From the NCBI GenBank assembly GCA_051294905.1, contig CM119380.1:25916001-25980000 (forward strand): a stretch of 64,000 nucleotides of DNA. Direction: 5' to 3'. This document shows positions 953-64,000 of this stretch, one piece after another (positions within the stretch are counted from its first letter, which is position 1; every line of letters begins with the position of its first letter). Below the pieces are notes generated by a model. The model saw only the letters and a program-made list of their open reading frames with translations. It made no database searches and was not told the origin of the DNA. The position numbers were made by a program, and so were the translations under genes. This DNA is from Botryllus schlosseri. Its lineage: Eukaryota.

Positions 953-1012
953 CTGAGACCATTTTATCGTTTGTGGAGAATCGCAATATCGTTACCTTCG
1001 CTAGCGACATAC

Positions 1013-1550: not shown

Positions 1551-1694
1551 ATCTCCGTCGCAATAGTAAGCAACCTTTGTCGTTACATTCTTGTTCTGTT
1601 GTGGACGCGGAGGGGCATTCGTCTATTTCGTCCGGAAATCGGTCACACTGCAGAGACGACTCTGTGGGCGTGAGAACAACTGGTGGTCGAGGTT
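1551..1694 (-). pseudogene. Degenerate tandem duplicate of the gene C a-type exon
   Basis: Near-identical to 1030-1171 with an intact ttcag acceptor. It has a 1-bp insertion in the GCYYC codons (caatagtaag vs caatagtag, about 1568) and has lost the sixth Cys and the donor. Confidence 0.75.
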
Positions 1695-11006: not shown

Positions 11007-12122
11007 TAGGGCGATTTTTTTTCCGAAAAACCGGAAGATTTTGACCTAAAAAATCTAACTTTTGACATTTTTTCACCTTAAAAAACCTAATTTTGACAAA
11101 ATTTTGACCACATGTATATAAATTAGGTGTCTTCGCACATAATGTTAGAATTGTACTACTTATCTTCATTTCTGATTGGAACTATCTGTCATTACGAAAA
11201 AGTTTGACCAGAAAAAAAATTTGACTCGAAAACTGACAGATCTTTACATTAAAAAACTTTCTTTTAGCGAAATCTTGACCTATGAATAATTCTAGCAGTT
11301 ACATCACGCGTTATGGTAGAAATAATTGAAATTTCTTGTGGTACAACGAAAGATACTTTTCTACATTCCCGGGTAGAAAGTGTCTGTCCTTATGAAGTCA
11401 GATGTTGAACGACACGTTCTCTCATAATTGCCAATATAGTCAATTAGGTAAATTGGGCGTATTTTTATACAAAGGAATGGGTACAAAATGCAAGAAATCG
11501 AGTGACAATAAATCGCGCGAAGTGCTAAGAAAAATTTCAAGTCAAATAAATCTACCACGAAAATTCTACTTTATTGCCATAGGGAGATCTACGGAACATG
11601 TTGCTGGCCCCTGGCTACGCCAATGCGTCGGAACCGGTATTTAAAATCATAAACATCCCTAATTTTGCAGTCAGGCTCAGCGAGTTTTTGGTTGGTCTTG
11701 GAAATTCACAGTAAATTACCTGAGTAATTTAATATTTGATATTATAACTTATTTCGGTAATTATCTCGCGGGCCACTCAAAATCCTCTCGCGTGCCACAT
11801 TTGACCCGCGGGCCATGGGTTGGCCGCCCCTGAGTTAGGATATCTTGGTACGTCGAGCATGACATCATGTAAACCTATTTATTTCATTTGACCGTGTTTA
11901 TGATTCACAATGAGCTGACGAAGGGGAGTCTACAACGGTAGGCCTGTAAAGTAGGCTACTAACTATAAAATGTCAAATGACAAGTTCACCGACAGTACAA
12001 ACATCTACAATACAAACGAAATGCAGCTTGCAAATAAATTATGAATTTGTAAACAATTTTGACAATTTCTTGACCTAACACTACAATTTTGACTTTTTTT
12101 GACATGTCAAAAAATCGCCCTG
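11007..12122. mobile_element. Non-autonomous hAT element
   Basis: TIR TAGGGCGATTTTTT/AAAAAATCGCCCTG; TSD gtcacgac/gtcatgac (7/8). Related to 23791-24588. Confidence 0.8.
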
Positions 12123-28000: not shown

Positions 28001-31000
28001 ATATGTCTTTTGAATTCGAAATTTAATTCGGTTTCACTTTTTTTTCGAATTCGGTAATCCTAATTCTAATTCTAATCTAGTTTTCTAGTTGCCAATTCTG
28101 CTCTTGAGAATTGCATCATCATAACATACATCAAGGTGCATTCTCGCACTGTGCATACCATCCAAGGCCATTGCCCTTCAGAGGCATCACTTCCTCCAAT
28201 AATTCTGACACCGAGTGACCGAGAAGAATCCGACGTAGAGAATGCGTCGTCTGAACTTTGACAGCAACTTTGTCCATCGTAACGTAGTTCCCAGCCTGGT
28301 GGGCATTCCTCTGTAAGATGGGAATTCACGAAAATATTCGAAGTTGGGTTTTTCTGAAGTTACTTACGACTCATGCATTGGTCAAGCGGTGAAACTGCAC
28401 TGCTACAGTAAGAGCATCGGTATTGATCGTTGCATTGTTGCTCTGAGACGCCATTGGCCGTTGGAAAAGGGAAGCAGCGCAGTGTCTCAGTTCCTCCGCA
28501 TGTCTGGGCTGTAGATACGTAGGTAATCGACAATATACTCTACTAGCTTAGGGTTAGCATATTTTCGCTGTACAGAATCAGGAGATTCTTTGCGCCCACT
28601 AGTGGATTTTGAAATGAGGCATGCGAACATTGTTTCCCAGTAAGACGTTGTTACCATATCAATGCCTTGCTTATCTTATGTACACGAATATGCATTTTTG
28701 AGCATAGCGTACCGAATTCACTAGGATATTGAACCATCTCTGGTTTGGGCTCTGTTGATTGCTAGCGGCTAGCGTTGGTGTTATCATTTGGTCTGCAACT
28801 TGACTGGCCGAATGAATAACAGCTCTGCTTTTAATAATATTACCTCGGTACAATTCTGTGGTTGTATGTGGGAATCAGGACATAATTTGTCAGTCACTCC
28901 CTCCACCCCCAGACAAAATATTAAAATAAAATAATAAACACTGGTCTTGGAACCCGACCTCTTCGCGGTCACCAGAAGAAGAAAAAACAGTAAGTAATAA
29001 GTACCACCGGGTTGACACCACTGCATTGACGAAAGCACCCAAATGTGCGTAACTGACACTATAAGGTTATACCGTTACCTCTATAGGCTACCTATAATAA
29101 TGGCCAGTACAATTAGACTTATTTCCGTAAATTATGAGTGTTTTTATTTATTTATTATTGTATTTTTGCGAGGGCTACCGATATTAAAATCAATCTATGT
29201 CCAAATTGTCCAGAGGCACTAAATCGCGCAAGACGCGAAGAAAATTGTCAAGTAGACTAAATATGCCCAAAATATGGTATTGTTTATGTTGGTTTACGAA
29301 AACATTTTGAGCCCCCAATCGGATGGTTTTGGGTGCGCCAGTTGCAACCCTGGGTGTAACGTCTTGCCTACAAACAGTTTGCGCCCCACTTAAACTAAAA
29401 ACTGTTACGATTGCTACCTCTCTTAGAATAAAACGCGAAATGAAGTAACACTTTACTGAAATATACACGACACAACTCAAAAGACCATACGGAATCCATC
29501 ATAGCCAATCCACACTGCATTGCTTCAATTTGCATTTCGCAGCGTACTCAGATGTAGGTCTTTCATATATTCTTTAAGATTGAATCATTGAACTCCTATA
29601 CTTGCATAGAGATGATAGTTCCTACAAAATTAGTATATAATCAGACTATTAGAGTAATCAAAAAGAGTGATTATTGTGATTTAAAAATTCTTAATTACGA
29701 GGTAGCTAATAGATTACTATTTTAACACTCACGTGTGTCCGGCAAGTCTGAAAAAAGATTACACATAGTTATACTCGGGCCACTATAACTTCTAGTGTGC
29801 ATGCTCTTCAAATACTCAAATTGCATATGGAAATATATATAGAATTCGTTATTTCACGTAGTCACCTTCGATTAAAGAATTCAATTGCCAATGTGTGGAC
29901 GTAGATGCAACATTTTAAGTTTCGCTATTTTCCGAGTATGAATATTAATTATTAACTTAGAAGTTAGCTCTCTTAAGAATGGTACGTTTTCTCACCACGA
30001 ACACAATTGTAAGCAGAATTACTGACACACCACGAGCATCCACGGTGCACACATTGGTACGGAGTTAATATCTCTGTCGGCGCGTCCCTGCAGTCGTACT
30101 GGGGTCCCATCCTCTGAGCGCCACATACAGTGCCTTAGGAAAATACAGTGAAGAATGTAGAGAATTGTGACTGACAAGATTTATTACAAACCTTGCATGC
30201 AAGACGGTGACCCCGTAGTGCACCAATGACATCCACTGAGCCAACATTGAACTTGTGTATCCTTCCTCGTAGGGTCTACATAGGAACATTCAGTTCTGGA
30301 ACCAGTCGCCGCACAATTTCCGTCGTATGACATCGGAGCTGAAATGATGGATAATGAAGTTATATATTTTCTTATGCATCAGCACTTGAACAGTATATAG
30401 TTATCTGGTATTTATCCGGAGTCCTGGGCATCGAAATAAAGCTTTAACATACACTGAAGAAAGATGATGACTCACCATGGACTATCTCCTCATCCGTATA
30501 CGGATCTAAATAAACAAATTAAACATAATTTCTTGACCATATATACTTGAAATCACTACCAATGAATCGCACTTTGGAAGCATTTATGTCCCGTGTGATG
30601 TGCACACCAGGAACAACCTGCCTCCCTGCAGATCTTCTTATCTGTTATTGAACCGCCGTTTAGGGTGTTGCACTCTGTATTCGATGACATGTCGACCCAC
30701 GAGCATCCAGCCCCTGAACGTGAATAGGGGGTCAGTATAATATGCGGCATTAACTTATCAGTAATTACTCTTTCCAATATACCTTGGACGCATTTGGTTG
30801 CCAAACTATCACAAAAGTAGCAGCCGTTGTCCCTGCATTCTTGTTCGTTGACGGACACGCTAGCAATCGGACATTCAGATATCTCCTCTATTTCCCGTGA
30901 ACAAGTCAGATCAGATACTCCGACTGCAGAACATAACAACGTTACCTGTTAGTATCTCAGGGTAATTACTCGGTACTCCTGTTAACGTTGATCAAGGGCT

Positions 31001-34000
31001 TGTGTGGTGTATGACGTGTGTGTGTTAGAACTTAGAAGACAATTACTGTTATCAATGATCCGCTTCATGCTTGACTGAGCCAGGATATGGATTACTAACC
31101 TACGTCAGAAGTTTCGCCTTTGTCAAATGTTTTCCCCCTCCTGCTATCAGACTATGCCAAGTTGTCTCAACACTCTAAACTCGCATGTGTACTGCACCCT
31201 ATGATACAGGTGCGGAATTGCGGTAGGCTACGGTATCTATATAATACCGCATTGGACTATACTATAATAGGCCTACTGTTCGAAAAAAATCATGTTACGA
31301 ATAAAAAAAAGCACAGAACCATATCAATTTACTGGTGATAAAAGCGAGTAATGCAGCAACCATTCGACTCATCGTATGAAACTCGTAATAAAATTCATAA
31401 CCATCCCCTGAATTACAGTTCCTATATGTAGTCACAGCGTGACCAAGAGTACTGACAATACATCGACATTACTTCCAATTTATGCATCTCGTGAGTTTGA
31501 AACTATTCGTTGATCCCTGATTAGTTTGCCATACAAGATACTGCAACTGCGTAACTGCATCTGATCGAAAATTGGGACATCCAATATGTAGCAGGATAAC
31601 ATCACACACACAGTGGACCATGTCCGGCACAGCATAAAAGCAAATACTCGCTCGAGCTGGACTGTTTCACAGTGTTGGGATCAAGTCACTACCTTCGAGT
31701 CACGAGTCATTTCGAGTCATTACACATTTTGACTCGAGTCAAGTCAAGTCAATCGATTTTCGAAGGTGACTCGAGTCAAGTCAAGTCACTCGATTTTTGG
31801 AGGTGACTCGAGTCAAGTCGAGTCAAGTCAAGTCAAGTCACGAGTCAAGTCACAATTCAAGTCAAATTGCCTTTTCGAGTTATGAGGCGTGATTACGTCA
31901 TTGTATTTTGCTAGCTGTCTGAAATGCTGATTGAGTGGTCATTGATTTTGAACAGATGACGGAATGTAGAGTTGAATATACACGGAAGCAAGGCGCTGCA
32001 TCGCTCTCATATAAGTAGAACCAATAAACTACGTAAGTAATTGCACAGCCTCAGTTACCAGCCAAAATAGAGAATAGAGAAACGAATTGATAAGATGCAA
32101 TACATTACCCTTTTGCAAACGGAGGCTACACTCGAAGGGGAACCGATCACGCATTCAAAATTAGCAATCAGAATCTTCATAGAATCTGTCCCACTGAAGG
32201 CCTTTCAGCATTCATTGATCACCAACAAGCTAAATTTCTTGCACACATAATTTAGGGTTACCATATTTTCGTTTCACAAATTCCGAACGCTCTTCAGCGC
32301 CCACTGGCGGATTACCAAATCAGGTGTGAGCACATTGTCGACTAATCCTACATCGTTAAGTCATGTTCACGTCACGCTGGTAACATTATTTATCAGCCTA
32401 TTGCCGATGTGCACTGCACCACTGAGTTATATAAACACCGCGTATCCGGTGGTTTCCAACCTTTTATGATCGCGACTTCATTTCCAATTTGAAAATGTGC
32501 CGCAGTCCAGCTCAAAATTTGATGAGCTGATTACTAATTAGAGGTCGGCACATTTGTCCACACTTACTCACGGCCTATTATGGAAGCTAATTACGTTCAA
32601 CATCTCCGCGAACCCCAGAATAAAGGTAAACTACCCCCGGGTTTAAAACCATCATCTTTGAATATAAAGCATCCAAACGGCCTGCCCTAAACCGACTATA
32701 TGAATATATCGTTATTTTGTAATTGCGATTACAATTAGACTTCTTTTGTAGATGAAGGTTATTTATTATTTATTTGTGATCGCAGTTTTTACGAGGGTGG
32801 TAGTCCCCATATTAATACCAGTATATATGACACTAAATCGTGCGCAGCGCGAAGAAATATTTCATGTAGCATAAATCTGCCCAAAAATAATCTTGTTTAT
32901 ATTGATTTACGAAAAAATTATGAGGCCTTCGAAATTTCGGACATTTAGGCATATTTTAGAAATTCCTCCCGGACGCATTTTTTACAGTGAAATTCCGGAC
33001 ATGTCCGGGAAATTCCGGACGTATGGCAACCCTAACATAATCCGAAAACATAATGACAGTGTCGTGAAGTTCAATAACGTTTGAAGATGAAAGAAGTACG
33101 AAAAAAGGAAGACCCTCCGCAACGCTGATGAACAATGTCCTCAATCGGAACGACACCGACATCAGGACATTCTCAAAAGCAGCACTTTCAAGGGAAATTT
33201 AATTTATAACTTAAATCTTTGATGCTCTCTTTTTTGATGAATACTGCCATCACCTCGGTGATGGTGCTCTAAGTCTGAACGCAGACAGAGCTAGACCTAT
33301 ATATATATATAAATTGATATGATACAATTCGAGCCTGCGCCAATGGTTGATAACTATGTAAAGTATTTTCGAATTCAATTGCAATAAAACAATAGATTTT
33401 GTTAAGTTAAGTACACAGAACAGAAATAGACATTTTGCTATTAAATTACTTTACTATACTATAGTTTACGACAACGTAGGTTGTAAGCTTCGATCACTTC
33501 GTTTGCGATCAATATATTTGTGAGAGAACAATGGAGGCTCAGTAAAACGCACGATCATTGAATGATTGGTCGCTCTCGCGGGTTACACCAGCGTTGCGCG
33601 AACAATCCGAACATATGCAAGATACAGTGATTTTCATCGACACTGATTGCTTGATGACTTGAAATTGACTCGTGAATTTTGCTCCGAGTCAGTAGTCAAT
33701 TCGCATTTCTTATAGGCCGAGTCAAGTCAAGTCAAGCCATTTTAGCAAAGTGACTCGAGTCAAGTCAAGTCATGCGAAAAAGTGACTCGAGTCTGACTCG
33801 AGTCAAGTCATGACTAGAGTCATCCCAACACTGCTGTTTCATGATAACAATCGATAACGTAAGATTATACTTACGATGCGGCTACGCATACCTGGATGCT
33901 CTAAAATAGAAACAAGCAAATACGTTAATCATTTCGTATGTACTTTTGTTTGGCGACTTTTAGGGTTTGTTGTGCACTTATTATATGATATATGCCAGCA

Positions 34001-44400: not shown

Positions 44401-45781
44401 CGTTTGGACCACAGTCCCGTATTGGCAACGTGACACAATCTATCAGTGATTTAACAATTAACATTTATACATTTTTTAATTAGAAGTTGAAGGGTTCATA
44501 GTATTTGGTTTATGCACATTGAGCCAGATACAGCCTGGGTCTCGCTATAGGCCGCTACATCAGGCCGATTAGGGTTACCATGGTAACCTTTAGGAGGATT
44601 AGTCCTCCTTTTTCGGGTTTTTGAAAAAGTGTCCTCCTTTGCCGATTTCAAAATATGGTAACCCTACGCTACATGATGTCACAAAATGCATGAGCACTGA
44701 GTAGCGACAACAAGAAAATGCCTAGTCAATGAGCTAAATCCAAAAATTAGGACTCTGTCACAGATTCCGAAATATGCTGACTACTGCCTCAACCTTATTT
44801 TTGCGTTGAGCAGCTACTTCCTAATCGCTGGATATCATCAACTTCCTAATCGCTATTGATCAATCCACAGATTGGCCGTATATCCAGATTTAATCACTGC
44901 AGTTTTTAGCCTCGAGTCTAAGATTGTGATTAACCTTTCATGAACCCCTTGGAAGGTAGGCCTAGTCTGCGGACCGCCGAAGTATTCACGGACCCAAATT
45001 TAAGAATTCTGCTTTACACGCTTGTTTTGTCGCTTCACACAAACTCCTTTAAATTTTTGTTGACGATTTTGTCAAAAACATCTACTGTGGAGCCATTTTT
45101 CTTCGGCGCCCCCATACCGCTACCCTGAGCCCATATTTGTATCTACGTTAACGTGAATTTTCTGACTTGAGTCAAGTTAAAAGCCGTAAACCAAAGAGAC
45201 TGCTTGCAATTTAAGGCAAAACACGGGTATGTTTTTTCAACAACGCAACCTCGTTTCAATCGTATCATCCATCGGATTAATATGTGAAAATATTTATCGA
45301 AAGAGAAGCTTTTCTTCTGTAAGTGTGCCGTGATGGAGCGGTATATCATGTCTCCAGTGTGCCACAAGATGACATAGTTTGTGAAGTACTGATATATATT
45401 CTCACCAAACAAGGGACAATAAGGGTCGCTATATAAGCTATCGGATTCATTTAGATGAATGGCATAATATTGCAGCCTACCTCCCCAACCAGCAAGAAAG
45501 CAATTCATTCCGGGCACAGGTTCCTCCCCCATCGGGAGGCTCAGGGGCGTGGCGTGGCTCGGGACTTCGCTGAAAAGCTAACACGCGCATAAGTTTGACA
45601 AACAAAAAGGGGGTGAGCGTGACGCAGTAGTACCTTCAGAACCATGATATCGTGCAAGGTATTTGAATAATATGGGAACGGGATAGCTTCGGCGACCTTA
45701 ATCTGCGCGCCAGAGAGAAAAACTGTCGATCCCGCATATATATATCCAGCTTCGAGCCCCGAAAAAGCGGCGTTCGTTAAT
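41464..45781 (-). CDS. Gene B: 3' part of a paralogous S1A serine protease
   Basis: join(45634-45781, 45481-45577, 43717-43874, 41464-41670). The first three exons have the same lengths and phases as in gene A. HDIMVLK, NCFLAGWG, QSACF|GDSGGALVCQRCSSC...YSCDSF*. The His and upstream exons were not found in the window. Confidence 0.88.
43067..43369. mobile_element. hAT/Charlie-like MITE
   Basis: TIR CAGTGGTTCTCAACC; perfect 8-bp TSD GGTTAGTG. Confidence 0.88.
44561..44666. mobile_element. 106-bp mini hAT-type insertion
   Basis: Perfect 8-bp direct repeat CGCTACAT on both sides; contains TAGGGTTACCAT...ATGGTAACCCTA. Confidence 0.65.
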
Positions 45782-48694: not shown

Positions 48695-49366
48695 TGGGGT
48701 TGCCATACGTCCGGAATTTCCCGGACATGTCCGGAATTTCACTGTTCAAACTGTGTCCGGAAGGAATTTCTAAAATATGCCCAAATGTCCGGAATTTTGA
48801 AGGCTTGAAGTAAGCTCATAACTTTTTCATAAATCAATATAAACAATATTATTTTTGGGAAGAATTATGCTACATGCAATTTTTCTTCGCGCAGCGCGCG
48901 ATTTAGTATCACATATATTGGTTTTAATATGGGGACTACCAGCCTCGCCAATACTGCGATCAAAATAAAAAAAATAGCATTCATTTACAGAAATAAGTCT
49001 AATTGTAATCGCAATAACAAGATAACGGTATATTCATAGAGTCGGTTTAGACCGTTTGGATTCAATGGATATTCAATGTGGTTCTAAACCTGGGTGTAGT
49101 TTGCCTTCATTATGGGATTCGCGAAGATGTTGAACGTAGTCAGCCTCCAAAATAGGCTTTGACTAAGTCTGGGCAAATTTGCCGACCTTTATTTAGTAAT
49201 CAGCTTGTCAAATTAGTAGCTGGGCCACGGCAAATTGGAAATGGAGTCGCGACCATAAAAGGTTGGAAACCACTAGATGTGCGGTGTTTATATATCTCAG
49301 TGGTTCAGTGCGGACCGGCATTAGGCTGATAAATAATCTAATCGGGGTGACATGAACATGACTTAA
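48695..49366. mobile_element. hAT MITE interrupted by the giant palindromic element
   Basis: Reverse-complement homolog of 32355-33034; starts TGGGGTTGCCATACGTCCGG. Homology resumes after 63975. Confidence 0.85.
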
Positions 49367-52300
49367 AGTAGTATATAAATGGGCGGAATCCCCTCATTCG
49401 CGATTTATAATAAACAAACAAAGATTATCAGTATAATAAACAATTAAAGAATTACCCGATTCTCATTTTTGCAGCAATACTTTTATGACCCTGTGTGCGG
49501 CAATCAAAAAGGGGGAATAATTAACGCTAGAGAGAAAAAGAACAAAGAATCTCGATTGACCTTTGTACTCTGGCCAGACATGAAACTTATTGATTAGTAA
49601 TTCTACTTGTACTTTTCCACTCGCCTCCTGATTTAATCTGTCTCGCTCGACCTCTGGACAAGGACACGAAACTAGAGCTGACTTCGGTCGTACGCGACGG
49701 GGCTTGGTAATAGTTGCCTGCCGACAAATCGCCCTGACCTATCGTTTTGTGGTCCAATTTCGTGACGGGGCTTTAGGAATAATTGCCCGTCAAACCACCC
49801 TGGTTGACTTGTCGTTTCGCGGTTGACTCGATTTCTTGTACGGGGGGGGGCATAGGAATAATTATCGGTCGTGACGTGAATAAAGTTTTCTCCTGATCGG
49901 TGAGATCCTGGTGCGTGTTTTAGGTGTCTATACGTTCGGCTGTGCATTGTGACGCTTGTAGTCTGTTCCATACTGTCGTACTTGCTCTTGCTTTGTTGTC
50001 GACTTAAATAGTAAGGAGAAATGATCTGTTCTGGTTATAAATATGTGTATCATTTTGAGTCATATCGAGAACCAGAAAGAATGTCGTGTATTAGAAATAG
50101 GTATTAGGCGCCCCCGACATAGATTAACTTAAATAAAGTAACATTTAAAATATAATAAGTAATTAGAGAAATAGCTGATTCTCAATTTTGCTCGCATCAA
50201 CGTGTTAACCCCCGGTATTACGTACCTAGTATTCGGTGCAAGCGGCAAATGTCGCTGTTCCATACCTATACCGCGTTCTAGCGTCTTAGGACAGACAGTC
50301 CGATCCGAACAATGTATTTATGATGGGTTCTTTTTACTGCTTCACGTCCGGTCAAGCGTAATCATACCAGTGCCTATAAATGATACGTAATTTACCGCGG
50401 GATATTAATTTTGTATGCTGTATATGATATACAACTTGAATCGATCAGTTGTCGAACTGATGCTTTACCCGTCTGTACGATCGATCACGAGCTCACCACG
50501 CACTTGTCGTTCGAGAGCGACTCATTTCGCTATAGACAATCAGTTGTGTTCGCGTGTACCGTAACATATCCTCAACACTTGTTATGCCAACGCCTCCACG
50601 CGTGTTTACAATATCATACTAAGGAACTATTGCTTCGGCAGCCACGCACTGTCGCTCGAAGTCAACAAATTTCGCTGCAGACAGTCAGTTGTAGGCCTAT
50701 TCGCGTATGTGTCGTAAATATATCCTCAACACATGTTATGCCAATACCTCCAAGCATATTTGCGGCATCATAATACGGGTATATTGATTCGGGGGATTGT
50801 TACCGTCAGAGAATTGCTGTGTCACCCCTTTTAGCCTCGCATTTCTCGTTCGAACTCGGTAACTGCGAGTGCGATGTCAGATTCAATTGTACAGTGACGA
50901 ATCGGGGTAGCTCGCTTCATCGGGGATCAGTGGACTGTCTTATTTGTCTGAAACGCGCTCGGTGGTGCAATAATGGGGATGAATTGTGACAGATCATATG
51001 TGATGCGATCTATAGCCTCCTTTCGGTGAGGATGAGTGGGAGATTTCGAAATCGGAATCCACTGCGACTATAGGATTGCAAAATCAAAGTCCAAAAAATC
51101 CGACTGACACGTAAATTCCTGGTTTCTCCGTATATTAGGCTGGGTAAAATGTAACATAAATCCGACTCTCACTTGGACGCATCCAGTCCGGGTTTAACCA
51201 AAACTGATGAAATCTGCGCCGGGTCCGGAAACGAATCGTGACCACCCCGTCCAGACAAAACAGTTCCGTTGTAAGGGGAGTGTCGTTGTACATTAATTTG
51301 CATACAGCGAAACTTTGTATCGACTCATTGTCGGACTTCTGTTTGTCTGTACAGGTGTTATTAGTGTAATTAGATTTGGTACCACAAGGAGCATATTGGT
51401 AAAATCACACAACGATAACAACTTTACCCGCCAACAACTCACATGGGATACATCAGAGGTCTCAAACACGCGCCCCGCGTTTTAGCCACGAGGACGCCAT
51501 TATTTTCGAAACACTAACAAGGTGGTTATTTTGTGTATCTGACGATGAAATTGCACTAAAATCACATCGAACATAGTAGGATCCTAAATAAAATAAGAAA
51601 CTTTCATTCCGCGACCTCAATAGTTACGTTTCACCTAGCTATATTACGGTTATTTTTGTAAGAAACAAGTCAAAAAGTAATATATTATCGTAAAACTCAC
51701 CAAGTCTCCTTTCAGCTTCAGAAATTAAGGTGACAGCTCAGTCTGACCATTAGGCATTCGTTAGGCTATTGTGACTCATTCAACACTCACTTTGTTTGGT
51801 AACAGCGATGGTGGGCGTCTTACCTTACATGGGGTGTTTTACCCCACTCTACCCTAATATAGAGCCTATCAAGTACAAGAAAAATTCTATCCAAATAGTT
51901 ATAAATCCGATGATTCTTTTCGTGCCAGGTCTAAATTGATACAAGAGTAAATCAAATTTTGACGATGTGTGTTTACTTTCAGCCTGCGGGATCGGCTCGC
52001 TTTCAATAGGACAATAAACTCCTGCCAAATAAGGCCTACTTGGAAAGACTCGGAATACTCCTATAAATGCTGCCCGCCTGTTTGACAAAACTCGCGTTTT
52101 CTGGTTGACAGCAATGCGATCCATTTGATGTCCCCATCGACCCTCCTATTTTGATGGGATTACCATACGGCCTCATTCAAGGGAGCATATGTCCTCCTTT
52201 TCCCAGATATGTCAGCCCATTCGGCCAAATGTACTCTCTTTCTGTCAATTTGTCCTCCTTGTTAGCTTAACATATCCAAAAAAACACCACTAGTAACGCA

Positions 52301-55300
52301 AAATGTGGGCCTAGATTACAAAAGTCGGGTACGTGGCCAAATCGGAAAAATGACGCTATGATGGTATTGTGCAGGCTATTACGTGGATACGGGGCCTGTG
52401 TAAACAGGTTTATGTGAATAGTAAAAGCGCGCCAAACTATCGTTACATGAAAAAGATCGAGCACACTCGACCATGTCGGGGTATACTTACCCTAGTACAG
52501 CCAAATGCTCCCATGTCGTAGCGGGAATAACCGGGGAGCATGGTAAATAATTCTCACAAGAAGTACTTTATAACGGTGTGAAATCTACGTCGTTCGTTAC
52601 GCGACGAGAATGAAGCAAGGCGCCACTGCAATCACTCTCTACACAACGTGCTAAGCACTGTAGGGGATACGCAACTACCGATTCTGGTCCGAGGAGCGAG
52701 ATATATGTAACGATTTACGACACATGCTAAATTTCCTTTCAAATGAAGTACAAAATGTGGCTTTTGAAGTACTCAAGTAGAAGTAGTTTTAAATAATAGT
52801 TGGTATCGTAAAATTACTTTCTAGTTTCATTATAAAGAGTAGGTTCCCATAGAACTGTCGAACCCAAGCACTTCAATATCCTATACCCAGCCCACCGACT
52901 GCAGAAGCTGCCCATCCCCGATGTAACATGTAAATGGTGCAATAGCGACAGCTAACGGTTGTCAATCATCCATAAAAAAAAAACTAGCCAGTAATACAGC
53001 CCTCAAGGATAACCTAGGAATATCTATGCGAGTCGACTCGATTGGCCCATGCGGCAAGTTTAGACACGAAAGCATTTTTAGGTGTGATATAATCCCAGTA
53101 TTTGTACTGTATTTTTCCAAGCACACATACCACAATCGAAAACGTAGTTCGCCCGTCTGACTCCCAACATTTGCCTCGAACAAAAGTGTCGGGTATATGT
53201 GACCATGGATGTACGACAAGTCTGTCCACCACTTTTGAGTAGATATTTGGAAAGACCGGCTCGTGATCACCTCCATACAAGGCATAATAGTTCTGCGTGC
53301 AGCGAAACTTTGCAGCGACCTATTTGCGGGGTGTGCATGTGTTGTTAGTGCAATCGTGTTTAGCACAACAAGAACGTAGTAATTTGAGGGTGAATAAAAT
53401 CTTACCCCACAACGATACCAACTTTACCCCCTCAACGACTCCAACGGGATGTATTTATGTGGATTTCATATTATTATGAAAAGCTAATCGACCACAAGAT
53501 ACTGTTACGTGCCATCCCCTTCGGTAGAGTTGTTAGTATTGTAACATGATGATCGGGAGCTATGACCTTTTACCCCCAGGTCTAAAAGGGTAGGAGAATT
53601 AGTTAGTGATACACCCGTCGGACGGTGTGGTATTCGACAAAATCACTCTGTTTTTACTACGGAAACGATGATCACACTGACGGGCTCTCATCACTTGTCG
53701 TACGAATGCTTGTAATTTCGGTTTGATGTGCGCAAATCAGCTGTGATCATTCGAGTGTGACGCGATCGAGGTCAGTCCTATCAGGTGTTTGAGAAAACTC
53801 GTATATTCAGTAAGGTTGACGGCAATGCGATATATTTGATGTCCCATTGATCCTCATACTAATAGGGGGATTGTCATACGTCCTCCTTCTCCAGGAAAAT
53901 ATCCTCGCACAAATGCACTCCTTTTTGTGAATTTATCTTCCGTTTTAGCTTAAAATACCCAAAAAATACCATGAATAACGCGAAATAAGGACCTACGAGA
54001 TACGGGCAGGGTCTATCTTACTGTTTTCGCATAATCGTGTTATTCAAATGTAGGATTTTGGTGTAGGTCTGATTGATAACTTTATAAAAGTGCGGTAAAC
54101 TCAGTACAAAACTACTTTCTGCTTTTTAAAGTCAAACGTGTAAAGAATATGTAATTTCACCTGAAACGGTTGAGGAGTAAGTTAAAACGACTTGGGTATA
54201 TAGCACAAGTACCGAGTACTCGAATTAGTAGCGTGACACCATTACTCAACCAAGTCCACAACACACAAACCGAGGAAATAATATACAGATATGGAAATAA
54301 CCCACGATATTTTCCGCTGACACGTGTCAGTACAACTCGACATTCAAGTCCATCTGGCTGCGGCTTGCAATTTGAAAGAGTTTGAAAAACCAGGGTGGTA
54401 GCCTATACCTAAAAACGTGGTATTGTTTTGTACGTTACGATTCTTTCTAGCCAGTTCGTCAGCTGCTAAATTAGTGCGTGTTGCATATGATACTTTAGAT
54501 AATTCGGCGAACGTTGCGAGTCTGCAGAATTCACAGCGGTGATAACTCGACGCAATGAATACGTGTTTCTATCCTAGCGGATCAAAGTGTCTCTCCATCC
54601 TCGTTATGCCAAAACACTTTTGTAAACACGGCGTATTAAAACAGACGTAGCCATCATAAAATCAACCAAAACCAATGTTCCATAGCGAATCTGATGTTAT
54701 CGATGACAAAAGTTATGGCCACCTCGTCTATGTCTAGCTCTATGGTACAACATGTCGAATTTTGTTTGCCAATCCCCGTCGGTTCAGTACAAGGCACGTG
54801 ATCTCAATAAAAACGAACGCGCAACCGAAACAGGTGAACTTTGTGTGATGTGTATTTTTGATAACACCGATATGGCAAACTTAAATCTCTCTGCTGACAA
54901 TAAAGTTGCTTATAATTAATCAAGCAACCCGGGGAGCAACAACTCGTAAACACGAATCGAATGGTCACGCCAACATCCCCGGGTATTCGATAGAACCGCT
55001 AATACCGCGGTAACCCAACTTCTGTAATCGTACATGTACGAAGCATTTGAATAGTGTTGCTCTGTGGCTCTTGGACTTCCAAGGACACTACGAGCGTAAG
55101 TCAATCTCACTGTTTGGAGTGCTAATGTCGCACCGTCGCAATAATGATCACTCGCTTATGTGTAGAAAGCGGAAATTGACGCCTGGGTTATTTGTACGAC
55201 CTCATAGCTTTGGTAAACTTACTAAAGCGGAAAGTCTCTGACAAGTTAGACATTGATTGATGTTCGTTCTCTTGCTAGCGATGATAATCGTTGGTACATG

Positions 55301-58300
55301 CTTTAAATTTTTTGTTATAATCGGGTGTGGTCACAAATAGACAGGGAACAACTTTGATGCGTTCAACAGAATACGCATGTAACACATCTTATTCCGGGCC
55401 GTAACCTATCGTTTTCCCCCACCTTCTATATGATAAACGTCGCCTTTACTCAGGGGTGTGCCGATGACCTAAGGAACCACAGGCTCTAACGTGTCATTTC
55501 GTTACTATTTCAACGTCACATGACAGCGTAGGTAGGCGTTGGGGTATGGTGCCCATCAATACAGTGTTGAACGCGATCCATAAGGACACCCACTTCGTGC
55601 TATACGTTTAAATAAATATTTTTACTCGTTACTACCACCTGGTGCGGGGTAGTGAGGTTGGTACAAAATTGAAACAGCCAATATAAACTAGGGGCTTATT
55701 ATTATTAATTATTAAACATCGTGTCCAGCTGCTTATAGAACGAAGGTTTTCTGCACCACAAACCAGTTCATTACACCTAATAACACAAGGGAAATTGTGT
55801 GTAAAGTACCATCCCATAACACATACTCAAAATCAACTAGTGATTTTCAAATGGATGTTATTGTGCTTTGCAATGGTTGTTAGCGGACATGGGGTGATAA
55901 TTTCATCAATATAATCGATTGCGATTACTGTTGTCACGGGACTATAACTACGGTTACAGAAAAATCTTGAAGTAGTCGAAACGTAATCACTAGCGTGCTA
56001 TTGTTTTACTCATTTTCCCCGTCATATGGCACCGACTATAAGCATTGATACAATACAGAGTATTGAACGTGATCCTTATAAGCATTGATACAATGTAGCA
56101 TTGACCGCGATCCGTGAGGACCCCTGCTGTGTGCTATTATGTCTAAAATTTATCACTCGTGACCACCACCGTGTGCGAGTTATCAATAAACCACAGAAAC
56201 GCCACTAAGCATAGGAGGAGGTAAATCCCCTACTCTGCCTAGTTTCAAATAGTAACGCAATTACTGACGTTTCGTTGAGTTAAACACAGTTTGAACGCTG
56301 CTGCTTAGCGGGCGGTAGGCCTATGTACAGCGGACATTAATTTGAAATTTTACACTCATTAAATAAATTCATGACAATTTCAAAGCATTAAAATCAACCG
56401 GTGCTAAAACAAATCATACAGTAAATTATACATAAATTATATCTCAAGTTTCGTGTCCTTGTCAAGAGGTCAAGCGTGGCGACTCACGCAGATAGCTAGT
56501 TTATTCTTTTTCGCTACGACATCTCCCCTTTTGATTGCCGTACAACGGGTTATAAAAGTATTGCTACAAAACTGGGAATCAGCTATGTCTTTAATTATCT
56601 ATCATATTGATAATATTGGTTTATTTAAGTTAAATCTTTGTTTGGACGTCTAATGCACATAGACGGGGCTTAGACGTAGTTATATAAGTGTGTATTAAAC
56701 GTCCAAACAAAGATTTAACTTAAATAAACCAATATTATCAATATGATAGATAATTAAAGACATAGCTGATTCCCAGTTTTGTAGCAATACTTTTATAACC
56801 CGTTGTACGGCAATCAAAAGGGGAGATGTCGTAGCGAAAAAGAATAAACTAGCTATCTGCGTGAGTCGCCACGCTTGACCTCTTGACAAGGACACGAAAC
56901 TTGAGATATAATTTATGTATAATTTACTGTATGATTTGTTTTAGCACCGGTTGATTTTAATGCTTTGAAATTGTCATGAATTTATTTAATGAGTGTAAAA
57001 TTTCAAATTAATGTCCGCTGTACATAGGCCTACCGCCCGCTAAGCAGCAGCGTTCAAACTGTGTTTAACTCAACGAAACGTCAGTAATTGCGTTACTATT
57101 TGAAACTAGGCAGAGTAGGGGATTTACCTCCTCCTATGCTTAGTGGCGTTTCTGTGGTTTATTGATAACTCGCACACGGTGGTGGTCACGAGTGATAAAT
57201 TTTAGACATAATAGCACACAGCAGGGGTCCTCACGGATCGCGGTCAATGCTACATTGTATCAATGCTTATAAGGATCACGTTCAATACTCTGTATTGTAT
57301 CAATGCTTATAGTCGGTGCCATATGACGGGGAAAATGAGTAAAACAATAGCACGCTAGTGATTACGTTTCGACTACTTCAAGATTTTTCTGTAACCGTAG
57401 TTATAGTCCCGTGACAACAGTAATCGCAATCGATTATATTGATGAAATTATCACCCCATGTCCGCTAACAACCATTGCAAAGCACAATAACATCCATTTG
57501 AAAATCACTAGTTGATTTTGAGTATGTGTTATGGGATGGTACTTTACACACAATTTCCCTTGTGTTATTAGGTGTAATGAACTAGTTTGTGGTGCAGAAA
57601 ACCTTCGTTCTATAAGCAGCTGGACACGATGTTTAATAATTAATAATAATAAGCCCCTAGTTTATATTGGCTGTTTCAATTTTGTACCAACCTCACTACC
57701 CCGCACCAGGTGGTAGTAACGAGTAAAAATATTTATTTAAACGTATAGCACGAAGTGGGTGTCCTTATGGATCGCGTTCAACACTGTATTGATGGGCACC
57801 ATACCCCAACGCCTACCTACGCTGTCATGTGACGTTGAAATAGTAACGAAATGACACGTTAGAGCCTGTGGTTCCTTAGGTCATCGGCACACCCCTGAGT
57901 AAAAGCGACGTTTATCATATAGAAGGTGGGGGAAAACGATAGGTTACGGCCCGGAATAAGATGTGTTACATGCGTATTGTGTTGAACGCATCAAAGTTGT
58001 TCCCTGTCTATTTGTGACCACACCCGATTATAACAAAAAATTTAAAGCATGTACCAACGATTATCATCGCTAGCAAGAGAACGAACATCAATCAATGTCT
58101 AACTTGTCAGAGACTTTCCGCTTTAGTAAGTTTACCAAAGCTATGAGGTCGTACAAATAACCCAGGCGTCAATTTCCGCTTTCTACACATAAGCGAGTGA
58201 TCATTATTGCGACGGTGCGACATTAGCACTCCAAACAGTGAGATTGACTTACGCTCGTAGTGTCCTTGGAAGTCCAAGAGCCACAGAGCAACACTATTCA

Positions 58301-61300
58301 AATGCTTCGTACATGTACGATTACAGAAGTTGGGTTACCGCGGTATTAGCGGTTCTATCGAATACCCGGGGATGTTGGCGTGACCATTCGATTCGTGTTT
58401 ACGAGTTGTTGCTCCCCGGGTTGCTTGATTAATTATAAGCAACTTTATTGTCAGCAGAGAGATTTAAGTTTGCCATATCGGTGTTATCAAAAATACACAT
58501 CACACAAAGTTCACCTGTTTCGGTTGCGCGTTCGTTTTTATTGAGATCACGTGCCTTGTACTGAACCGACGGGGATTGGCAAACAAAATTCGACATGTTG
58601 TACCATAGAGCTAGACATAGACGAGGTGGCCATAACTTTTGTCATCGATAACATCAGATTCGCTATGGAACATTGTTTTTGGTTGATTTTATGATGGCTA
58701 CGTCTGTTTTAATACGCCGTGTTTACAAAAGTGTTTTGGCATAACGAGGATGGAGAGACACTTTGATCCGCTAGGATAGAAACACGTATTCATTGCGTCG
58801 AGTTATCACCGCTGTGAATTCTGCAGACTCGCAACGTTCGCCGAATTATCTAAAGTATCATATGCAACACGCACTAATTTAGCAGCTGACGAACTGGCTA
58901 GAAAGAATCGTAACGTACAAAACAATACCACGTTTTTAGGTATAGGCTACCACCCTGGTTTTTCAAACTCTTTCAAATTGCAAGCCGCAGCCAGATGGAC
59001 TTGAATGTCGAGTTGTACTGACACGTGTCAGCGGAAAATATCGTGGGTTATTTCCATATCTGTATATTATTTCCTCGGTTTGTGTGTTGTGGACTTGGTT
59101 GAGTAATGGTGTCACGCTACTAATTCGAGTACTCGGTACTTGTGCTATATACCCAAGTCGTTTTAACTTACTCCTCAACCGTTTCAGGTGAAATTACATA
59201 TTCTTTACACGTTTGACTTTAAAAAGCAGAAAGTAGTTTTGTACTGAGTTTACCGCACTTTTATAAAGTTATCAATCAGACCTACACCAAAATCCTACAT
59301 TTGAATAACACGATAATGCGAAAACAGTAAGATAGACCCTGCCCGTATCTCGTAGGTCCTTATTTCGCGTTATTCATGGTATTTTTTGGGTATTTTAAGC
59401 TAAAACGGAAGATAAATTCACAAAAAGGAGTACATTTGTGCGAGGATATTTTCCTGGAGAAGGAGGACGTATGACAATCCCCCTATTAGTATGAGGATCA
59501 ATGGGACATCAAATATATCGCATTGCCGTCAACTTTACTGAATATACGAGTTTTCTCAAACACCTGATAGGACTGACCTCGATCGCGTCACACTCGAATG
59601 ATCACAGCTGATTTGCGCACATCAAACCGAAATTACAAGCATTCGTACGACAAGTGATGAGAGCCCGTCAGTGTGATCATCGTTTCCGTAGTAAAAACAG
59701 AGTGATTTTGTCGAATACCACACCGTCCGACGGGTGTATCACTAACTAATTCTCCTACCCTTTTAGACCTGGGGGTAAAAGGTCATAGCTCCCGATCATC
59801 ATGTTACAATACTAACAACTCTACCGAAGGGGATGGCACGTAACAGTATCTTGTGGTCGATTAGCTTTTCATAATAATATGAAATCCACATAAATACATC
59901 CCGTTGGAGTCGTTGAGGGGGTAAAGTTGGTATCGTTGTGGGGTAAGATTTTATTCACCCTCAAATTACTACGTTCTTGTTGTGCTAAACACGATTGCAC
60001 TAACAACACATGCACACCCCGCAAATAGGTCGCTGCAAAGTTTCGCTGCACGCAGAACTATTATGCCTTGTATGGAGGTGATCACGAGCCGGTCTTTCCA
60101 AATATCTACTCAAAAGTGGTGGACAGACTTGTCGTAGATCCATGGTCACATATACCCGACACTTTTGTTCGAGGCAAATGTTGGGAGTCAGACGGGCGAA
60201 CTACGTTTTCGATTGTGGTATGTGTGCTTGGAAAAATACAGTACAAATACTGGGATTATATCACACCTAAAAATGCTTTCGTGTCTAAACTTGCCGCATG
60301 GGCCAATCGAGTCGACTCGCATAGATATTCCTAGGTTATCCTTGAGGGCTGTATTACTGGCTAGTTTTTTTTTTATGGATGATTGACAACCGTTAGCTGT
60401 CGCTATTGCACCATTTACATGTTACATCGGGGATGGGCAGCTTCTGCAGTCGGTGGGCTGGGTATAGGATATTGAAGTGCTTGGGTTCGACAGTTCTATG
60501 GGAACCTACTCTTTATAATGAAACTAGAAAGTAATTTTACGATACCAACTATTATTTAAAACTACTTCTACTTGAGTACTTCAAAAGCCACATTTTGTAC
60601 TTCATTTGAAAGGAAATTTAGCATGTGTCGTAAATCGTTACATATATCTCGCTCCTCGGACCAGAATCGGTAGTTGCGTATCCCCTACAGTGCTTAGCAC
60701 GTTGTGTAGAGAGTGATTGCAGTGGCGCCTTGCTTCATTCTCGTCGCGTAACGAACGACGTAGATTTCACACCGTTATAAAGTACTTCTTGTGAGAATTA
60801 TTTACCATGCTCCCCGGTTATTCCCGCTACGACATGGGAGCATTTGGCTGTACTAGGGTAAGTATACCCCGACATGGTCGAGTGTGCTCGATCTTTTTCA
60901 TGTAACGATAGTTTGGCGCGCTTTTACTATTCACATAAACCTGTTTACACAGGCCCCGTATCCACGTAATAGCCTGCACAATACCATCATAGCGTCATTT
61001 TTCCGATTTGGCCACGTACCCGACTTTTGTAATCTAGGCCCACATTTTGCGTTACTAGTGGTGTTTTTTTGGATATGTTAAGCTAACAAGGAGGACAAAT
61101 TGACAGAAAGAGAGTACATTTGGCCGAATGGGCTGACATATCTGGGAAAAGGAGGACATATGCTCCCTTGAATGAGGCCGTATGGTAATCCCATCAAAAT
61201 AGGAGGGTCGATGGGGACATCAAATGGATCGCATTGCTGTCAACCAGAAAACGCGAGTTTTGTCAAACAGGCGGGCAGCATTTATAGGAGTATTCCGAGT

Positions 61301-63969
61301 CTTTCCAAGTAGGCCTTATTTGGCAGGAGTTTATTGTCCTATTGAAAGCGAGCCGATCTCGCAGGCTGAAAGTAAACACACATCGTCAAAATTTGATTTA
61401 CTCTTGTATCAATTTAGACCTGGCACGAAAAGAATCATCGGATTTATAACTATTTGGATAGAATTTTTCTTGTACTTGATAGGCTCTATATTAGGGTAGA
61501 GTGGGGTAAAACACCCCATGTAAGGTAAGACGCCCACCATCGCTGTTACCAAACAAAGTGAGTGTTGAATGAGTCACAATAGCCTAACGAATGCCTAATG
61601 GTCAGACTGAGCTGTCACCTTAATTTCTGAAGCTGAAAGGAGACTTGGTGAGTTTTACGATAATATATTACTTTTTGACTTGTTTCTTACAAAAATAACC
61701 GTAATATAGCTAGGTGAAACGTAACTATTGAGGTCGCGGAATGAAAGTTTCTTATTTTATTTAGGATCCTACTATGTTCGATGTGATTTTAGTGCAATTT
61801 CATCGTCAGATACACAAAATAACCACCTTGTTAGTGTTTCGAAAATAATGGCGTCCTCGTGGCTAAAACGCGGGGCGCGTGTTTGAGACCTCTGATGTAT
61901 CCCATGTGAGTTGTTGGCGGGTAAAGTTGTTATCGTTGTGTGATTTTGCCAATATGCTCCTTGTGGTACCAAATCTAACTACACTAATAACACCTGTACA
62001 GACAAACAGAAGTCCGACAATGAGTCGATACAAAGCTTCGCTGTATGCAAATTAATGTACACCGACACTCCCCTACAACGGAACTGTTTTGTCTGGACGG
62101 GGTGGTCACGATTCGTTTCCGGCGCAGATTTCATCAGTTTTGGTTAAACCCGGACTGGATGCGTCCAAGTGAGAGTCGGATTTATGCTACATTTTACCCA
62201 GCCTAATATATGGAGAAACCAGGAATTTACGTGTCAGTCGGATTTTTTGGACTTTGATTTTGCAATCCTATAGTCGCAGTGGATTCCGATTTCGAAATCT
62301 CCCACTCATCCTCACCGAAAGGAGGCTATAGATCGCATCACATATGATCTGTCACAATTCATCCCCATTATTGCACCACCGAGCGCGTTTCAGCCAAATA
62401 AGACAGTCCACTGATCCCCGATGAAGCGAGCTACCCCGATTCGTCACTGTACAATTGAATCTGACATCGCACTCGCAGTTACCGAGTTCGAACGAGAAAT
62501 GCGAGGCTAAAAGGGGTGACACAGCAATTCTCTGACGGTAACAATCCCCCGAATCAATATACCCGTATTATGATGCCGCAAATATGCTTGGAGGTATTGG
62601 CATAACATGTGTTGAGGATATATTTACGACACATACGCGAATACAACTGACTGTCTGCAGCGAAATTTGTTGACTTCGAGCGACAGTGCGTGGCTGCCGA
62701 AGCAATAGTTCCTTAGTATGATATTGTAAACACGCGTGGAGGCGTTGGCATAACAAGTGTTGAGGATATGTTACGGTACACGCGAACACAACTGATTGTC
62801 TATAGCGAAATGAGTCGCTCTCGAACGACAAGTGCGTGGTGAGCTCGTGATCGATCGTACAGACGGGTAAAGCATCAGTTCGACAACTGATCGATTCAAG
62901 TTGTATATCATATACAGCATACAAAATTAATATCCCGCGGTAAATTACATATCATTTATAGGCACTGGTATGATTACGCTTGACCGGACGTGAAGCAGTA
63001 AAAAGAACCCATCATAAATACATTGTTCGGATCGGACTGTCTGTCCTAAGACGCTAGAACGCGGTATAGGTATGGAACAGCGACATTTGCCGCTTGCACC
63101 GAATACTAGGTACGTAATACCGGGGGTTAACACGTTGATGCGAGCAAAATTGAGAATCAGCTATTTCTCTAATTACTTATTATATTTTAAATGTTACTTT
63201 ATTTAAGTTAATCTATGTCGGGGGCGCCTAATACCTATTTCTAATACACGACATTCTTTCTGGTTCTCGATATGACTCAAAATGATACACATATTTATAA
63301 CCAGAACAGATCATTTCTCCTTACTATTTAAGTCGACAACAAAGCAAGAGCAAGTACGACAGTATGGAACAGACTACAAGCGTCACAATGCACAGCCGAA
63401 CGTATAGACACCTAAAACACGCACCAGGATCTCACCGATCAGGAGAAAACTTTATTCACGTCACGACCGATAATTATTCCTATGCCCCCCCCCCGTACAT
63501 GAAATCGAGTCAACCGCGAAACGACAAGTCAACCAGGGTGGTTTGACGGGCAATTATTCCTAAAGCCCCGTCACGAAATTGGACCACAAAACGATAGGTC
63601 AGGGCGATTTGTCGGCAGGCAACTATTACCAAGCCCCGTCGCGTACGACCGAAGTCAGCTCTAGTTTCGTGTCCTTGTCCAGAGGTCGAGCGAGACAGAT
63701 TAAATCAGGAGGCGAGTGGAAAAGTACAAGTAGAATTACTAATCAATAAGTTTCATGTCTGGCCAGAGTACAAAGGTCAATCGAGATTCTTTGTTCTTTT
63801 TCTCTCTAGCGTTAATTATTCCCCCTTTTTGATTGCCGCACACAGGGTCATAAAAGTATTGCTGCAAAAATGAGAATCGGGTAATTCTTTATTTGTTTAT
63901 TATACTGATAATCTTTGTTTGTTTATTATAAATCGCGAATGAGGGGATTCCGCCCATTTATATACTACT
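49367..63969. mobile_element. 14.6-kb palindromic non-autonomous element with Polinton/Maverick-type ends
   Basis: Termini AGTAGTATATAAAT...ATTTATATACTACT. 6-bp TSD ACTTAA at 49361-49366 and 63970-63975. Arms 49367-56649 and 56699-63969 are reverse complements. Longest ORF is 134 aa with no recognisable domain. The palindrome and TSD are directly seen; the Polinton assignment is inferred from end and TSD type. Confidence 0.85.
56650..56698. other. 49-bp spacer / imperfect hairpin at the palindrome centre
   Basis: Perfect symmetry stops at 56649/56699. The next 10 bp pair 8/10, leaving a 29-nt loop at 56660-56688. Confidence 0.9.
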
Positions 63970-64000
63970 ACTTAACGATGGACGATTACCCTCCTTGCAT

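What the first reader, a model, noticed from the sequence alone, without database searches (positions are those of the whole stretch)
56676..56900. A degenerate copy of the element's own terminus sits at the palindrome centre: monomer-to-dimer rescue model
Seen: from the loop, GTAGTTATATAAG...CAAACAAAGATT...ATTATCA...AATTAAAGA...GATTC...AGCAATACTTTTAT.ACCC...CGGCAATCAAAA.GGGG...GACCTCT.GACAAGGACACGAAACT aligns in blocks with the outer end at 49367-49680 (AGTAGTATATAAAT...). So 56676-63969 looks like a complete 7.3-kb unit with one intact and one decayed TIR. The left arm is an inverted copy of it lacking about 25 bp of the inner end. Inference: fold-back at the decayed end turned a one-ended, integration-defective monomer into a dimer with two identical functional ends. 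This would be a general way for protein-primed elements to regain mobility. It is analogous to the snap-back genomes known from protein-primed and parvoviral replicons.
Basis: partly seen in the sequence, partly recalled or inferred. Interest (0 to 1): 0.78.

Follow-up and report, generated by a model that had tools for sequence, protein, structure and literature searches.

The report
Palindromic dimer of a non-coding transposon
A 14.6-kb stretch that reads almost the same on both strands is a single inserted mobile element made of two head-to-head copies of a 7.3-kb non-coding unit. The mirror axis sits on the unit's old, diverged inner end. This shows how such a dimer can arise and move as one piece, but not that it is a self-replicating, virus-like element.

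Summary
56676-56900 aligns with the outer end 49367-49680 far above shuffled and natural AT-rich controls (z about 37-40; blastn E=2e-23 for the 115-nt core). A weaker tip-like motif (13/15, p about 0.01) lies in the 29-nt asymmetric centre.

New evidence: the whole palindrome 49367-63969 is flanked by a 6-bp duplication, ACTTAA. A paralogous repeat copy at about 32350 preserves the empty site. So the dimer was inserted as one unit and is not an assembly artefact.

The arms differ by 21 substitutions and 4 indels (0.29%). Two substitutions lie in the innermost 10 nt (P=4e-4). This fits a pre-existing short imperfect inverted repeat that primed a snap-back.

The element has no coding capacity: no Pfam domain in 30 reading frames, and no 3-base periodicity.

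The ends fit Polinton/Maverick hallmarks: a 6-bp duplication, AG...CT ends, an AGTAGT terminal triplet repeat, and about 15 kb in length. No polymerase or integrase gene is present, and no relatives could be retrieved.

"Protein-primed" and "rescue of a defective monomer" therefore remain untested inference. Host break repair explains the dimer equally well. The finding is a moderately interesting new variant of foldback-type non-autonomous elements.

The parts
49361..49366 (.). Left copy of the 6-bp target-site duplication, ACTTAA
   Evidence: Read directly. It is single-copy in the paralogous empty site at about 32350-32360 on the minus strand.
49367..56659 (+). Left arm of the palindrome (7293 nt): an inverted copy of the right unit that lacks the innermost 13-29 nt
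   Evidence: the repeat finder I1-I4. Global alignment of the arms gives 21 mismatches and 4 indels, 99.5% identity.
49367..49680 (+). Outer terminal region. It starts AGTAGT (AG end, triplet repeated twice), then the 115-nt module 49402-49516, then two copies of a roughly 28-nt box (about 49568-49595 and 49650-49677).
49693..49870 (+). Three subterminal repeat units of about 30 nt; two of them carry the 10-mer GACGGGGCTT
50103..50211 (+). Third, internal copy of the terminal module (74% identical to the inner copy), in the same orientation as the outer copy
56443..56654 (-). Diverged inverted copy of the outer terminal region at the inner end of the left arm
   Evidence: 80% over 115 nt, E=2e-23; 76% over 59 nt, E=3e-6.
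56650..56659 (+). Innermost 10 nt of the left arm. It forms an 8/10 inverted repeat with 56689-56698 and is the proposed pre-existing short inverted repeat that primed the snap-back.
   Evidence: Two of the 21 arm mismatches lie here, followed by 885 clean nt. P=3.9e-4.
56660..56688 (+). Asymmetric 29-nt centre: 16 nt (56660-56675, containing GACGGGGCTT) plus a 13-nt tip-like motif (56676-56688)
56689..63969 (+). Right arm (7281 nt). Together with 56676-56688 it makes up the putative complete 7.3-kb unit.
56694..56905 (+). Diverged copy of the outer terminal region at the inner end of the right unit. This is the finding's region.
   Evidence: (D5).
63656..63969 (-). Outer terminal region of the right arm, the mirror of 49367-49680
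   Evidence: (I4).
63970..63975 (.). Right copy of the target-site duplication, ACTTAA
32300..32440 (-). Paralogous empty site. An older copy of the host repeat into which the palindrome was inserted; it reads straight through a single ACTTAA.
   Evidence: (I8-I12).

Best explanation
49367-63969 is one insertion of a non-coding, non-autonomous DNA element. It is a head-to-head (inverted) dimer of a roughly 7.3-kb unit.

Shown:
- The unit carries a diverged inverted copy of its outer terminal region at its inner end.
- The mirror axis therefore coincides with the unit's old inner end.
- The dimer is flanked by a 6-bp target duplication and interrupts a repeat whose paralogue keeps the empty site. 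So the dimer existed before it arrived here, and it was inserted as one piece.

Inferred:
- The dimer arose by a snap-back. A DNA end about 26 nt or more beyond the unit's inner tip was resected. It folded back on a short imperfect inverted repeat (10 nt, 8/10, around a 29-nt spacer) and was extended along the unit. The next round of replication turned the hairpin into an inverted dimer.
- The two resulting identical outer ends (AG...CT, AGTAGT triplet repeat) served as substrates for an integrase or transposase supplied in trans by an autonomous relative.
- The 6-bp duplication and the end features make a Polinton/Maverick-type partner the most likely source, but this affiliation is tentative.
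- Whether the copying polymerase belonged to the host or to an element cannot be decided from this sequence.
For: Anatomy:
- Palindrome arms and the 29-nt centre.
- Arms 99.5% identical, with differences spread along their length and a 13:8 transition:transversion ratio. These look like real mutations rather than read errors.

Insertion as one unit:
- ACTTAA lies on both sides.
- The left and right flanks each align to the paralogue at 32300-32440, which has a single ACTTAA.

Unit with diverged ends:
- z about 37-40 and E=2e-23.
- The inverted module ends 5 nt from the axis. By my estimate that has about a 1% chance for a randomly placed axis.

Snap-back signature:
- Two mismatches in the innermost 10 nt and none in the next 885 nt (P=3.9e-4).
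- A non-palindromic spacer flanked by a short inverted repeat is what break-induced snap-back leaves behind (review PMC7999016).

Non-autonomous:
- No Pfam family in 30 stop-to-stop frames of 57 aa or more.
- No 3-base periodicity.
- The longest frame, 153 aa, is close to the random expectation.

End hallmarks:
- 6-bp duplication, long inverted ends, a 1-3-bp terminal tandem repeat and a 15-20 kb size are given for Polintons in PMC4196379.
- 6 bp is given for Polinton in PMC10045372.
- Polintons with roughly 2-kb gene-bearing inverted ends are reported in bioRxiv 10.1101/2025.02.07.637071.
Against: - There is only one copy. No monomer, second dimer or autonomous partner could be retrieved, because no eukaryotic genome collection is available.
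- The module that defines the 'inner terminus' also occurs a third time inside the arm. It could be a subterminal repeat rather than a former end.
- The tip motif alone is weak (p about 0.01). The same bases also resemble a subterminal repeat unit (16/20).
- The two innermost mismatches could instead come from mutation-prone processing of a palindrome centre.
- The Polinton affiliation rests on end features only. The defining genes are absent.
- The duplication contains TTAA, so a 4-bp TTAA reading is not strictly excluded (1/16 coincidence).
Confidence: 0.55

Rival explanations
1. A protein-primed (Polinton-like) monomer had one decayed, non-functional end. A displaced strand self-primed at that end, and element-encoded replication produced a dimer with two good ends. 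Mobility was thereby regained, as a general route for such elements.
For: - Unit with one diverged end, truncated left arm and identical outer ends.
- The dimer demonstrably inserted after it formed.
- The AGTAGT terminal triplet repeat and the 6-bp duplication fit protein-primed, integrase-bearing elements.
- About 20% divergence between the unit's ends against 0.3% between the arms fits long dormancy followed by recent activity.
Against: - There is no polymerase, terminal-protein or integrase gene, nor any remnant of one.
- The centre holds at least 26 nt beyond the putative inner tip, including the mismatch-bearing 10 nt. A free protein-capped linear monomer would not have that DNA.
- Neutral decay would have hit both ends of the monomer equally, so 'one intact, one decayed' is not shown.
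- No second example exists to support generality.
Confidence: 0.15
2. There never was a monomer. The element is a foldback-type transposon whose inverted ends grew inwards by repair or gene conversion until only 29 nt stayed asymmetric. The 'inner terminus' is merely one of several subterminal copies of a binding-site module.
For: - The module occurs three times per arm in both orientations.
- The arm holds several other old internal duplications, 64-76% identical.
- Inward growth of inverted ends to about 2 kb is reported for Polintons.
Against: - Two collinear blocks plus a tip-like motif reproduce the order of the outer end over about 215-310 nt, not just the module.
- The inverted copy abuts the axis within 5 nt.
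- The innermost-mismatch signature fits a single snap-back better than stepwise extension.
Confidence: 0.15
3. The palindrome is an assembly or read artefact, such as a fold-back chimeric long read or an amplification chimera.
For: Near-identical arms around a very short spacer are typical of such artefacts.
Against: - An artefact would mirror the left flank on the right side. Here the right flank continues the host repeat exactly where the empty-site paralogue predicts, with a 6-bp duplication.
- The arms differ by 21 substitutions with a transition bias.
- The centre contains element-like sequence.
Confidence: 0.03
4. The insertion was made by a TTAA-specific cut-and-paste transposase (piggyBac- or Kolobok-like), not by a 6-bp-staggered integrase.
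For: The duplicated ACTTAA contains TTAA.
Against: - It needs two extra matching bases by chance (1/16).
- It leaves the two ends unequal by 2 nt.
- The AG...CT ends are not those I recall for these superfamilies (own knowledge).
Confidence: 0.05

Closest known systems
Non-autonomous Polinton/Maverick elements
   Same: - 6-bp target duplication.
- Long inverted ends.
- AG...CT termini (the definition is from my memory of Kapitonov and Jurka 2006, a paper not held here).
- A short terminal tandem repeat (AGTAGT).
- Total length of 14.6 kb, close to the 15-20 kb range.
   Different: - No protein-primed polymerase, integrase, capsid, protease or ATPase gene, and no remnant of one.
- The inverted ends cover all but 29 nt of the element, whereas 0.1-2 kb is what has been described.
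- No sequence link to any autonomous element could be made.
Foldback-type transposons (Drosophila FB, Galileo and similar)
   Same: Very long inverted arms, little or no coding capacity, and mobilisation in trans.
   Different: - The arms here are complex unique sequence, not arrays of short tandem subrepeats. Tandem Repeats Finder reports one small array only.
- The duplication is 6 bp, not the 7-9 bp I recall for those families (own knowledge).
- The arms are themselves a former unit bounded by inverted ends.
Break-induced snap-back palindromes (yeast and mammalian palindromic duplications; review PMC7999016)
   Same: A short inverted repeat flanks a non-palindromic spacer at the axis, and the arms are otherwise copied faithfully.
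   Different: The product here is not a chromosome-arm duplication. It is a bounded mobile unit that was subsequently inserted elsewhere with a target duplication.
Inverted-dimer ('snap-back') defective genomes of protein-primed and hairpin-ended linear replicons
   Same: A head-to-head dimer with two identical origin-bearing ends made from one end of a linear genome. This analogy is from my own knowledge; no supporting paper was found in the library.
   Different: - There is no evidence that this element ever replicated as a free linear molecule.
- The centre keeps DNA beyond the putative tip.
IS3EU / GingerRoot
   Same: 6-bp target duplication.
   Different: Those families end in TA...TA, occasionally TG...CA. 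This element ends in AG...CT.

Membership tests
Polinton/Maverick | [quoted passage not shown] | tested here: not met
   No Pfam family in any of 30 stop-to-stop frames of 57 aa or more in the arm, and no 3-base periodicity. A non-autonomous derivative would not be expected to meet this.
Polinton/Maverick | Encodes a retrovirus-like (rve) integrase | tested here: not met
   Same scans.
Polinton/Maverick | 6-bp target-site duplication | tested here: met
   ACTTAA lies on both sides and is single in the paralogous empty site. The definition is from PMC4196379 and PMC10045372.
Polinton/Maverick | Terminal inverted repeats of about 100-1000 bp | tested here: inconclusive
   The dimer's inverted ends are 7.3 kb, far beyond the range. 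The unit's own diverged ends of about 215-310 nt fall within it.
Polinton/Maverick | AG at the 5' end and a 1-3-bp terminal tandem repeat | tested here: met
   The element begins AGTAGT and ends ACTACT. The tandem-repeat criterion is from PMC4196379. The AG criterion is from memory.
Polinton/Maverick | Ends shared with an autonomous element of the same genome | not testable with these tools
   No eukaryotic genome collection is available. Metagenome and viral scans found nothing relevant.
Drosophila-type Foldback elements | Arms built of short tandem subrepeats | tested here: not met
   Only one 40-nt, two-copy array in the arm.
IS3EU/GingerRoot | TA...TA termini with a 6-bp duplication | tested here: not met
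   The termini are AG...CT.
piggyBac/Kolobok-like | TTAA target duplicated, with ends symmetric around it | tested here: inconclusive
   TTAA lies inside the duplicated hexamer. A 4-bp reading leaves the ends unequal by 2 nt and needs a 1/16 coincidence.
Snap-back (short-inverted-repeat-primed) palindromes | Short inverted repeat flanking a non-palindromic spacer at the axis, with arms otherwise copied | tested here: met
   A 10-nt 8/10 repeat lies around the 29-nt centre, followed by 885 identical nt. The definition is from PMC7999016.

The most novel reading that the evidence does not exclude
A virus-like, Polinton-type family contains half-length non-coding units that become transmissible only as inverted dimers. 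Dimerisation would give two identical ends and also restore a near-unit length (14.6 kb against 15-20 kb for autonomous elements), as if a size or two-origin requirement selected for palindromic dimers. That would be a new class of defective, interfering-like passengers of Polintons.
Probability: 0.1. Interest if true: 0.8.

Novelty: new variant of a known kind. Interest (0 to 1): 0.45.

Why it matters
Long, nearly perfect palindromes with short spacers are fragile in eukaryotic genomes, and how they arise is usually inferred from tumours or engineered yeast. Here a natural 14.6-kb example keeps both its birth scar and proof that it later moved as one piece. The scar is a short imperfect inverted repeat around a 29-nt spacer, placed at the old end of a bounded unit. 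The proof is a target duplication together with a preserved empty site. If the family proves to be a passenger of Polinton-type elements, it would show that inverted dimerisation can make a mobilisable element from a half-length unit. It would also give a purely sequence-based way to date and count such events.

Tried and rejected
Searches for relatives, all without result:
- blastn of the arm against the rest of the window: no other copy.
- The terminal 14-mer in the window: only the two ends at zero mismatches.
- Two metagenome scans with conserved end patterns: no matches.
- Three viral-contig scans: nothing, or four seed-only chance hits L001-L004 that extend only 25-31 nt.
- Word search with the 134-aa frame: nothing.
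- Exact look-up of ten arm frames among about 15 billion proteins: none present.
- Full-text search for the end sequences: only unrelated primers.
- The bacterial/archaeal genome collection, the phage, plasmid and E. coli collections and the large protein-representative search were not used. The window has no frame of 150 aa or more, and the claim does not rest on any protein.

Searches for coding capacity, all without result:
- Pfam on 30 arm frames and 20 frames elsewhere in the window.
- 3-base periodicity.
- Rfam.

Readings rejected:
- Assembly artefact and two independent insertions. The empty site has no room for host DNA at the centre, and the left arm is truncated.
- IS3EU/GingerRoot, because of its termini.

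Reading left open but weak:
- The centre as a copy of a subterminal unit. The match is 16/20, about 0.2 such matches are expected by chance somewhere in the arm, and the 10-mer has E=0.93 in the window.

Literature:
- Kapitonov and Jurka 2006 and Krupovic and Koonin 2015 are not held.
- No paper on palindromic Polinton derivatives was found.

Full report
**Setting**

The window looks like non-coding eukaryotic DNA.
- It has no open reading frame of 150 aa or more and no Rfam family.
- GC is about 41%.
- The CpG observed/expected ratio is 1.07. By my own knowledge this excludes a vertebrate source, so I do not take the contig for human.
- I could not name the organism.

**The structure**

Positions 49367-63969 form a 14.6-kb near-perfect palindrome.
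- The left arm is 49367-56659 and the right arm is 56689-63969. A 29-nt asymmetric centre lies at 56660-56688.
- The arms are 99.5% identical, with 21 substitutions (13 transitions, 8 transversions) and 4 indels.
- The differences are spread along the whole length, with an excess in the outer 2 kb (14 of 25, P=0.003).

**Checking the observation**

The inner end of the right arm really is a diverged copy of the outer end.
- The local alignment of 49367-49680 with 56676-56900 scores 72.5. Dinucleotide shuffles give 11.4 +/- 1.7, and natural segments of the same window give 10.5 +/- 1.6.
- blastn gives two collinear blocks: 80% over 115 nt (E=2e-23) and 76% over 59 nt (E=3e-6).
- The roughly 80-nt length difference between outer and inner copies comes from a roughly 28-nt box that is present twice in the outer end and once in the inner end.
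- The very tip is weaker. 13 of 15 positions match with one indel, at the expected side and orientation, with p about 0.01.
- The roughly 110-nt core is a module found three times per arm. A 30-nt motif conserved among all copies occurs six times in the window, all inside the element.

**New evidence on what moved**

- The palindrome is flanked by ACTTAA on both sides.
- Its flanks belong to an older host repeat. That repeat has an inverted paralogue at 32349-33032.
- I aligned the left flank and the right flank to that paralogue separately. Each stops or starts at a single ACTTAA.
- The dimer therefore existed before it came here, and it was inserted as one unit with a 6-bp duplication.
- This rules out a fold-back assembly artefact, which would mirror the left flank on the right side.
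- It also rules out two independent monomer insertions, which would leave target DNA at the centre.

**Coding capacity**

None was detected.
- The longest stop-to-stop frame in the arm is 153 aa, near the random expectation.
- Thirty frames of 57 aa or more have no Pfam family at E<=1 apart from two noise-level hits.
- No 600-nt window shows 3-base periodicity.
- The frames have no relatives or identical entries in the protein collections.
- The element is non-autonomous.

**The centre and how the dimer formed**

- Two of the 21 substitutions lie 4 and 9 nt from the inner end of the arms. The next 885 nt are identical (P=3.9e-4).
- The simplest reading is that the innermost 10 nt are a pre-existing imperfect inverted repeat (8/10) around a 29-nt spacer. 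Everything further out would have been copied.
- Break-induced snap-back leaves this anatomy. A break next to a short inverted repeat is resected, folds back, primes synthesis and yields a large palindrome after replication (PMC7999016).
- On this reading the DNA end lay at least 26 nt beyond the tip-like motif. It was therefore not a clean, free element terminus. This fits host repair of a break beside a resident unit somewhat better than self-priming of a protein-capped linear monomer.
- The 16 unpaired nt contain GACGGGGCTT, which is also part of a subterminal repeat unit at 49696 and 49764.
- The extended match to that unit (16/20) is at about chance level for an arm-wide search, so its origin stays open.

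**Family**

- A 6-bp duplication, very long inverted ends, AG...CT termini, the AGTAGT terminal triplet repeat and a length near 15 kb match the published hallmarks of Polinton/Maverick elements (PMC4196379; PMC10045372). The AG criterion is from my memory of Kapitonov and Jurka 2006, which is not held here.
- Polintons with roughly 2-kb gene-bearing inverted ends are reported in bioRxiv 10.1101/2025.02.07.637071.
- IS3EU/GingerRoot also make 6-bp duplications but end in TA...TA.
- The hexamer contains TTAA, so a TTAA-specific transposase cannot be strictly excluded. It would need a 1/16 coincidence and unequal ends.
- The defining Polinton genes are absent and no autonomous partner could be sought. 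I therefore file the element as working like a non-autonomous Polinton-type element, not as a proven member.

- The anatomy is right, and the dimer did move.
- Three parts of the model are not supported by anything in the sequence: that replication was protein-primed, that the monomer was defective at one end, and that the route is general.
- The roughly 20% divergence between the unit's ends against 0.3% between the arms is compatible with an old unit and a recent dimer. Neutral decay, however, would affect both ends.

**Limits**

No tool here holds eukaryotic genomes.

- I compared the flanks of the nested insertion apart.

Noticed in passing
window 48697-49366 and 63970-64000; window 32349-33032: The palindrome sits inside a copy of an older host repeat. 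An inverted paralogue, 82-93% identical, lies 16 kb upstream and preserves the uninterrupted target. The repeat family itself is unidentified.
   Followed up: partly
window 21505-22100: A 596-bp foldback, MITE-like unit. Its arms are 272 nt and 98% complementary, with a 52-nt spacer. The flanks show an imperfect repeat of about 8 bp (CTTCCAC / CTTTCAC). It is unrelated in sequence to the large palindrome.
   Followed up: partly
window 756-2222: Two tandem units of about 520 bp lie at 1049-1794. They overlap cysteine-rich frames (for example 756-1181 on the minus strand) whose Cys spacing looks trefoil-like. A weak Trefoil hit (E=0.037) was seen in a frame at 30559-30939. The word search found no relatives. 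These may be exons of a repeat-domain gene.
   Followed up: partly
whole window: The CpG observed/expected ratio is 1.07 outside the element and 1.17 in the arm. There is no CpG depletion, which suggests a host without heavy germline cytosine methylation.
   Followed up: no
window 50496-50792, 52079-52313/53786-53995, 51299-51449/53294-53450, 55557-55651/56091-56182: Several old internal duplications, 64-74% identical and mostly direct, lie inside each arm. The unit's interior is itself a patchwork of ancient repeats.
   Followed up: no
window 11039-11398 / 24246-24579; 3462-3654 / 20368-20560; 24667-24966 / 45478-45777: Further dispersed repeat pairs, 75-83% identical and of unknown family, elsewhere in the window.
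   Followed up: no
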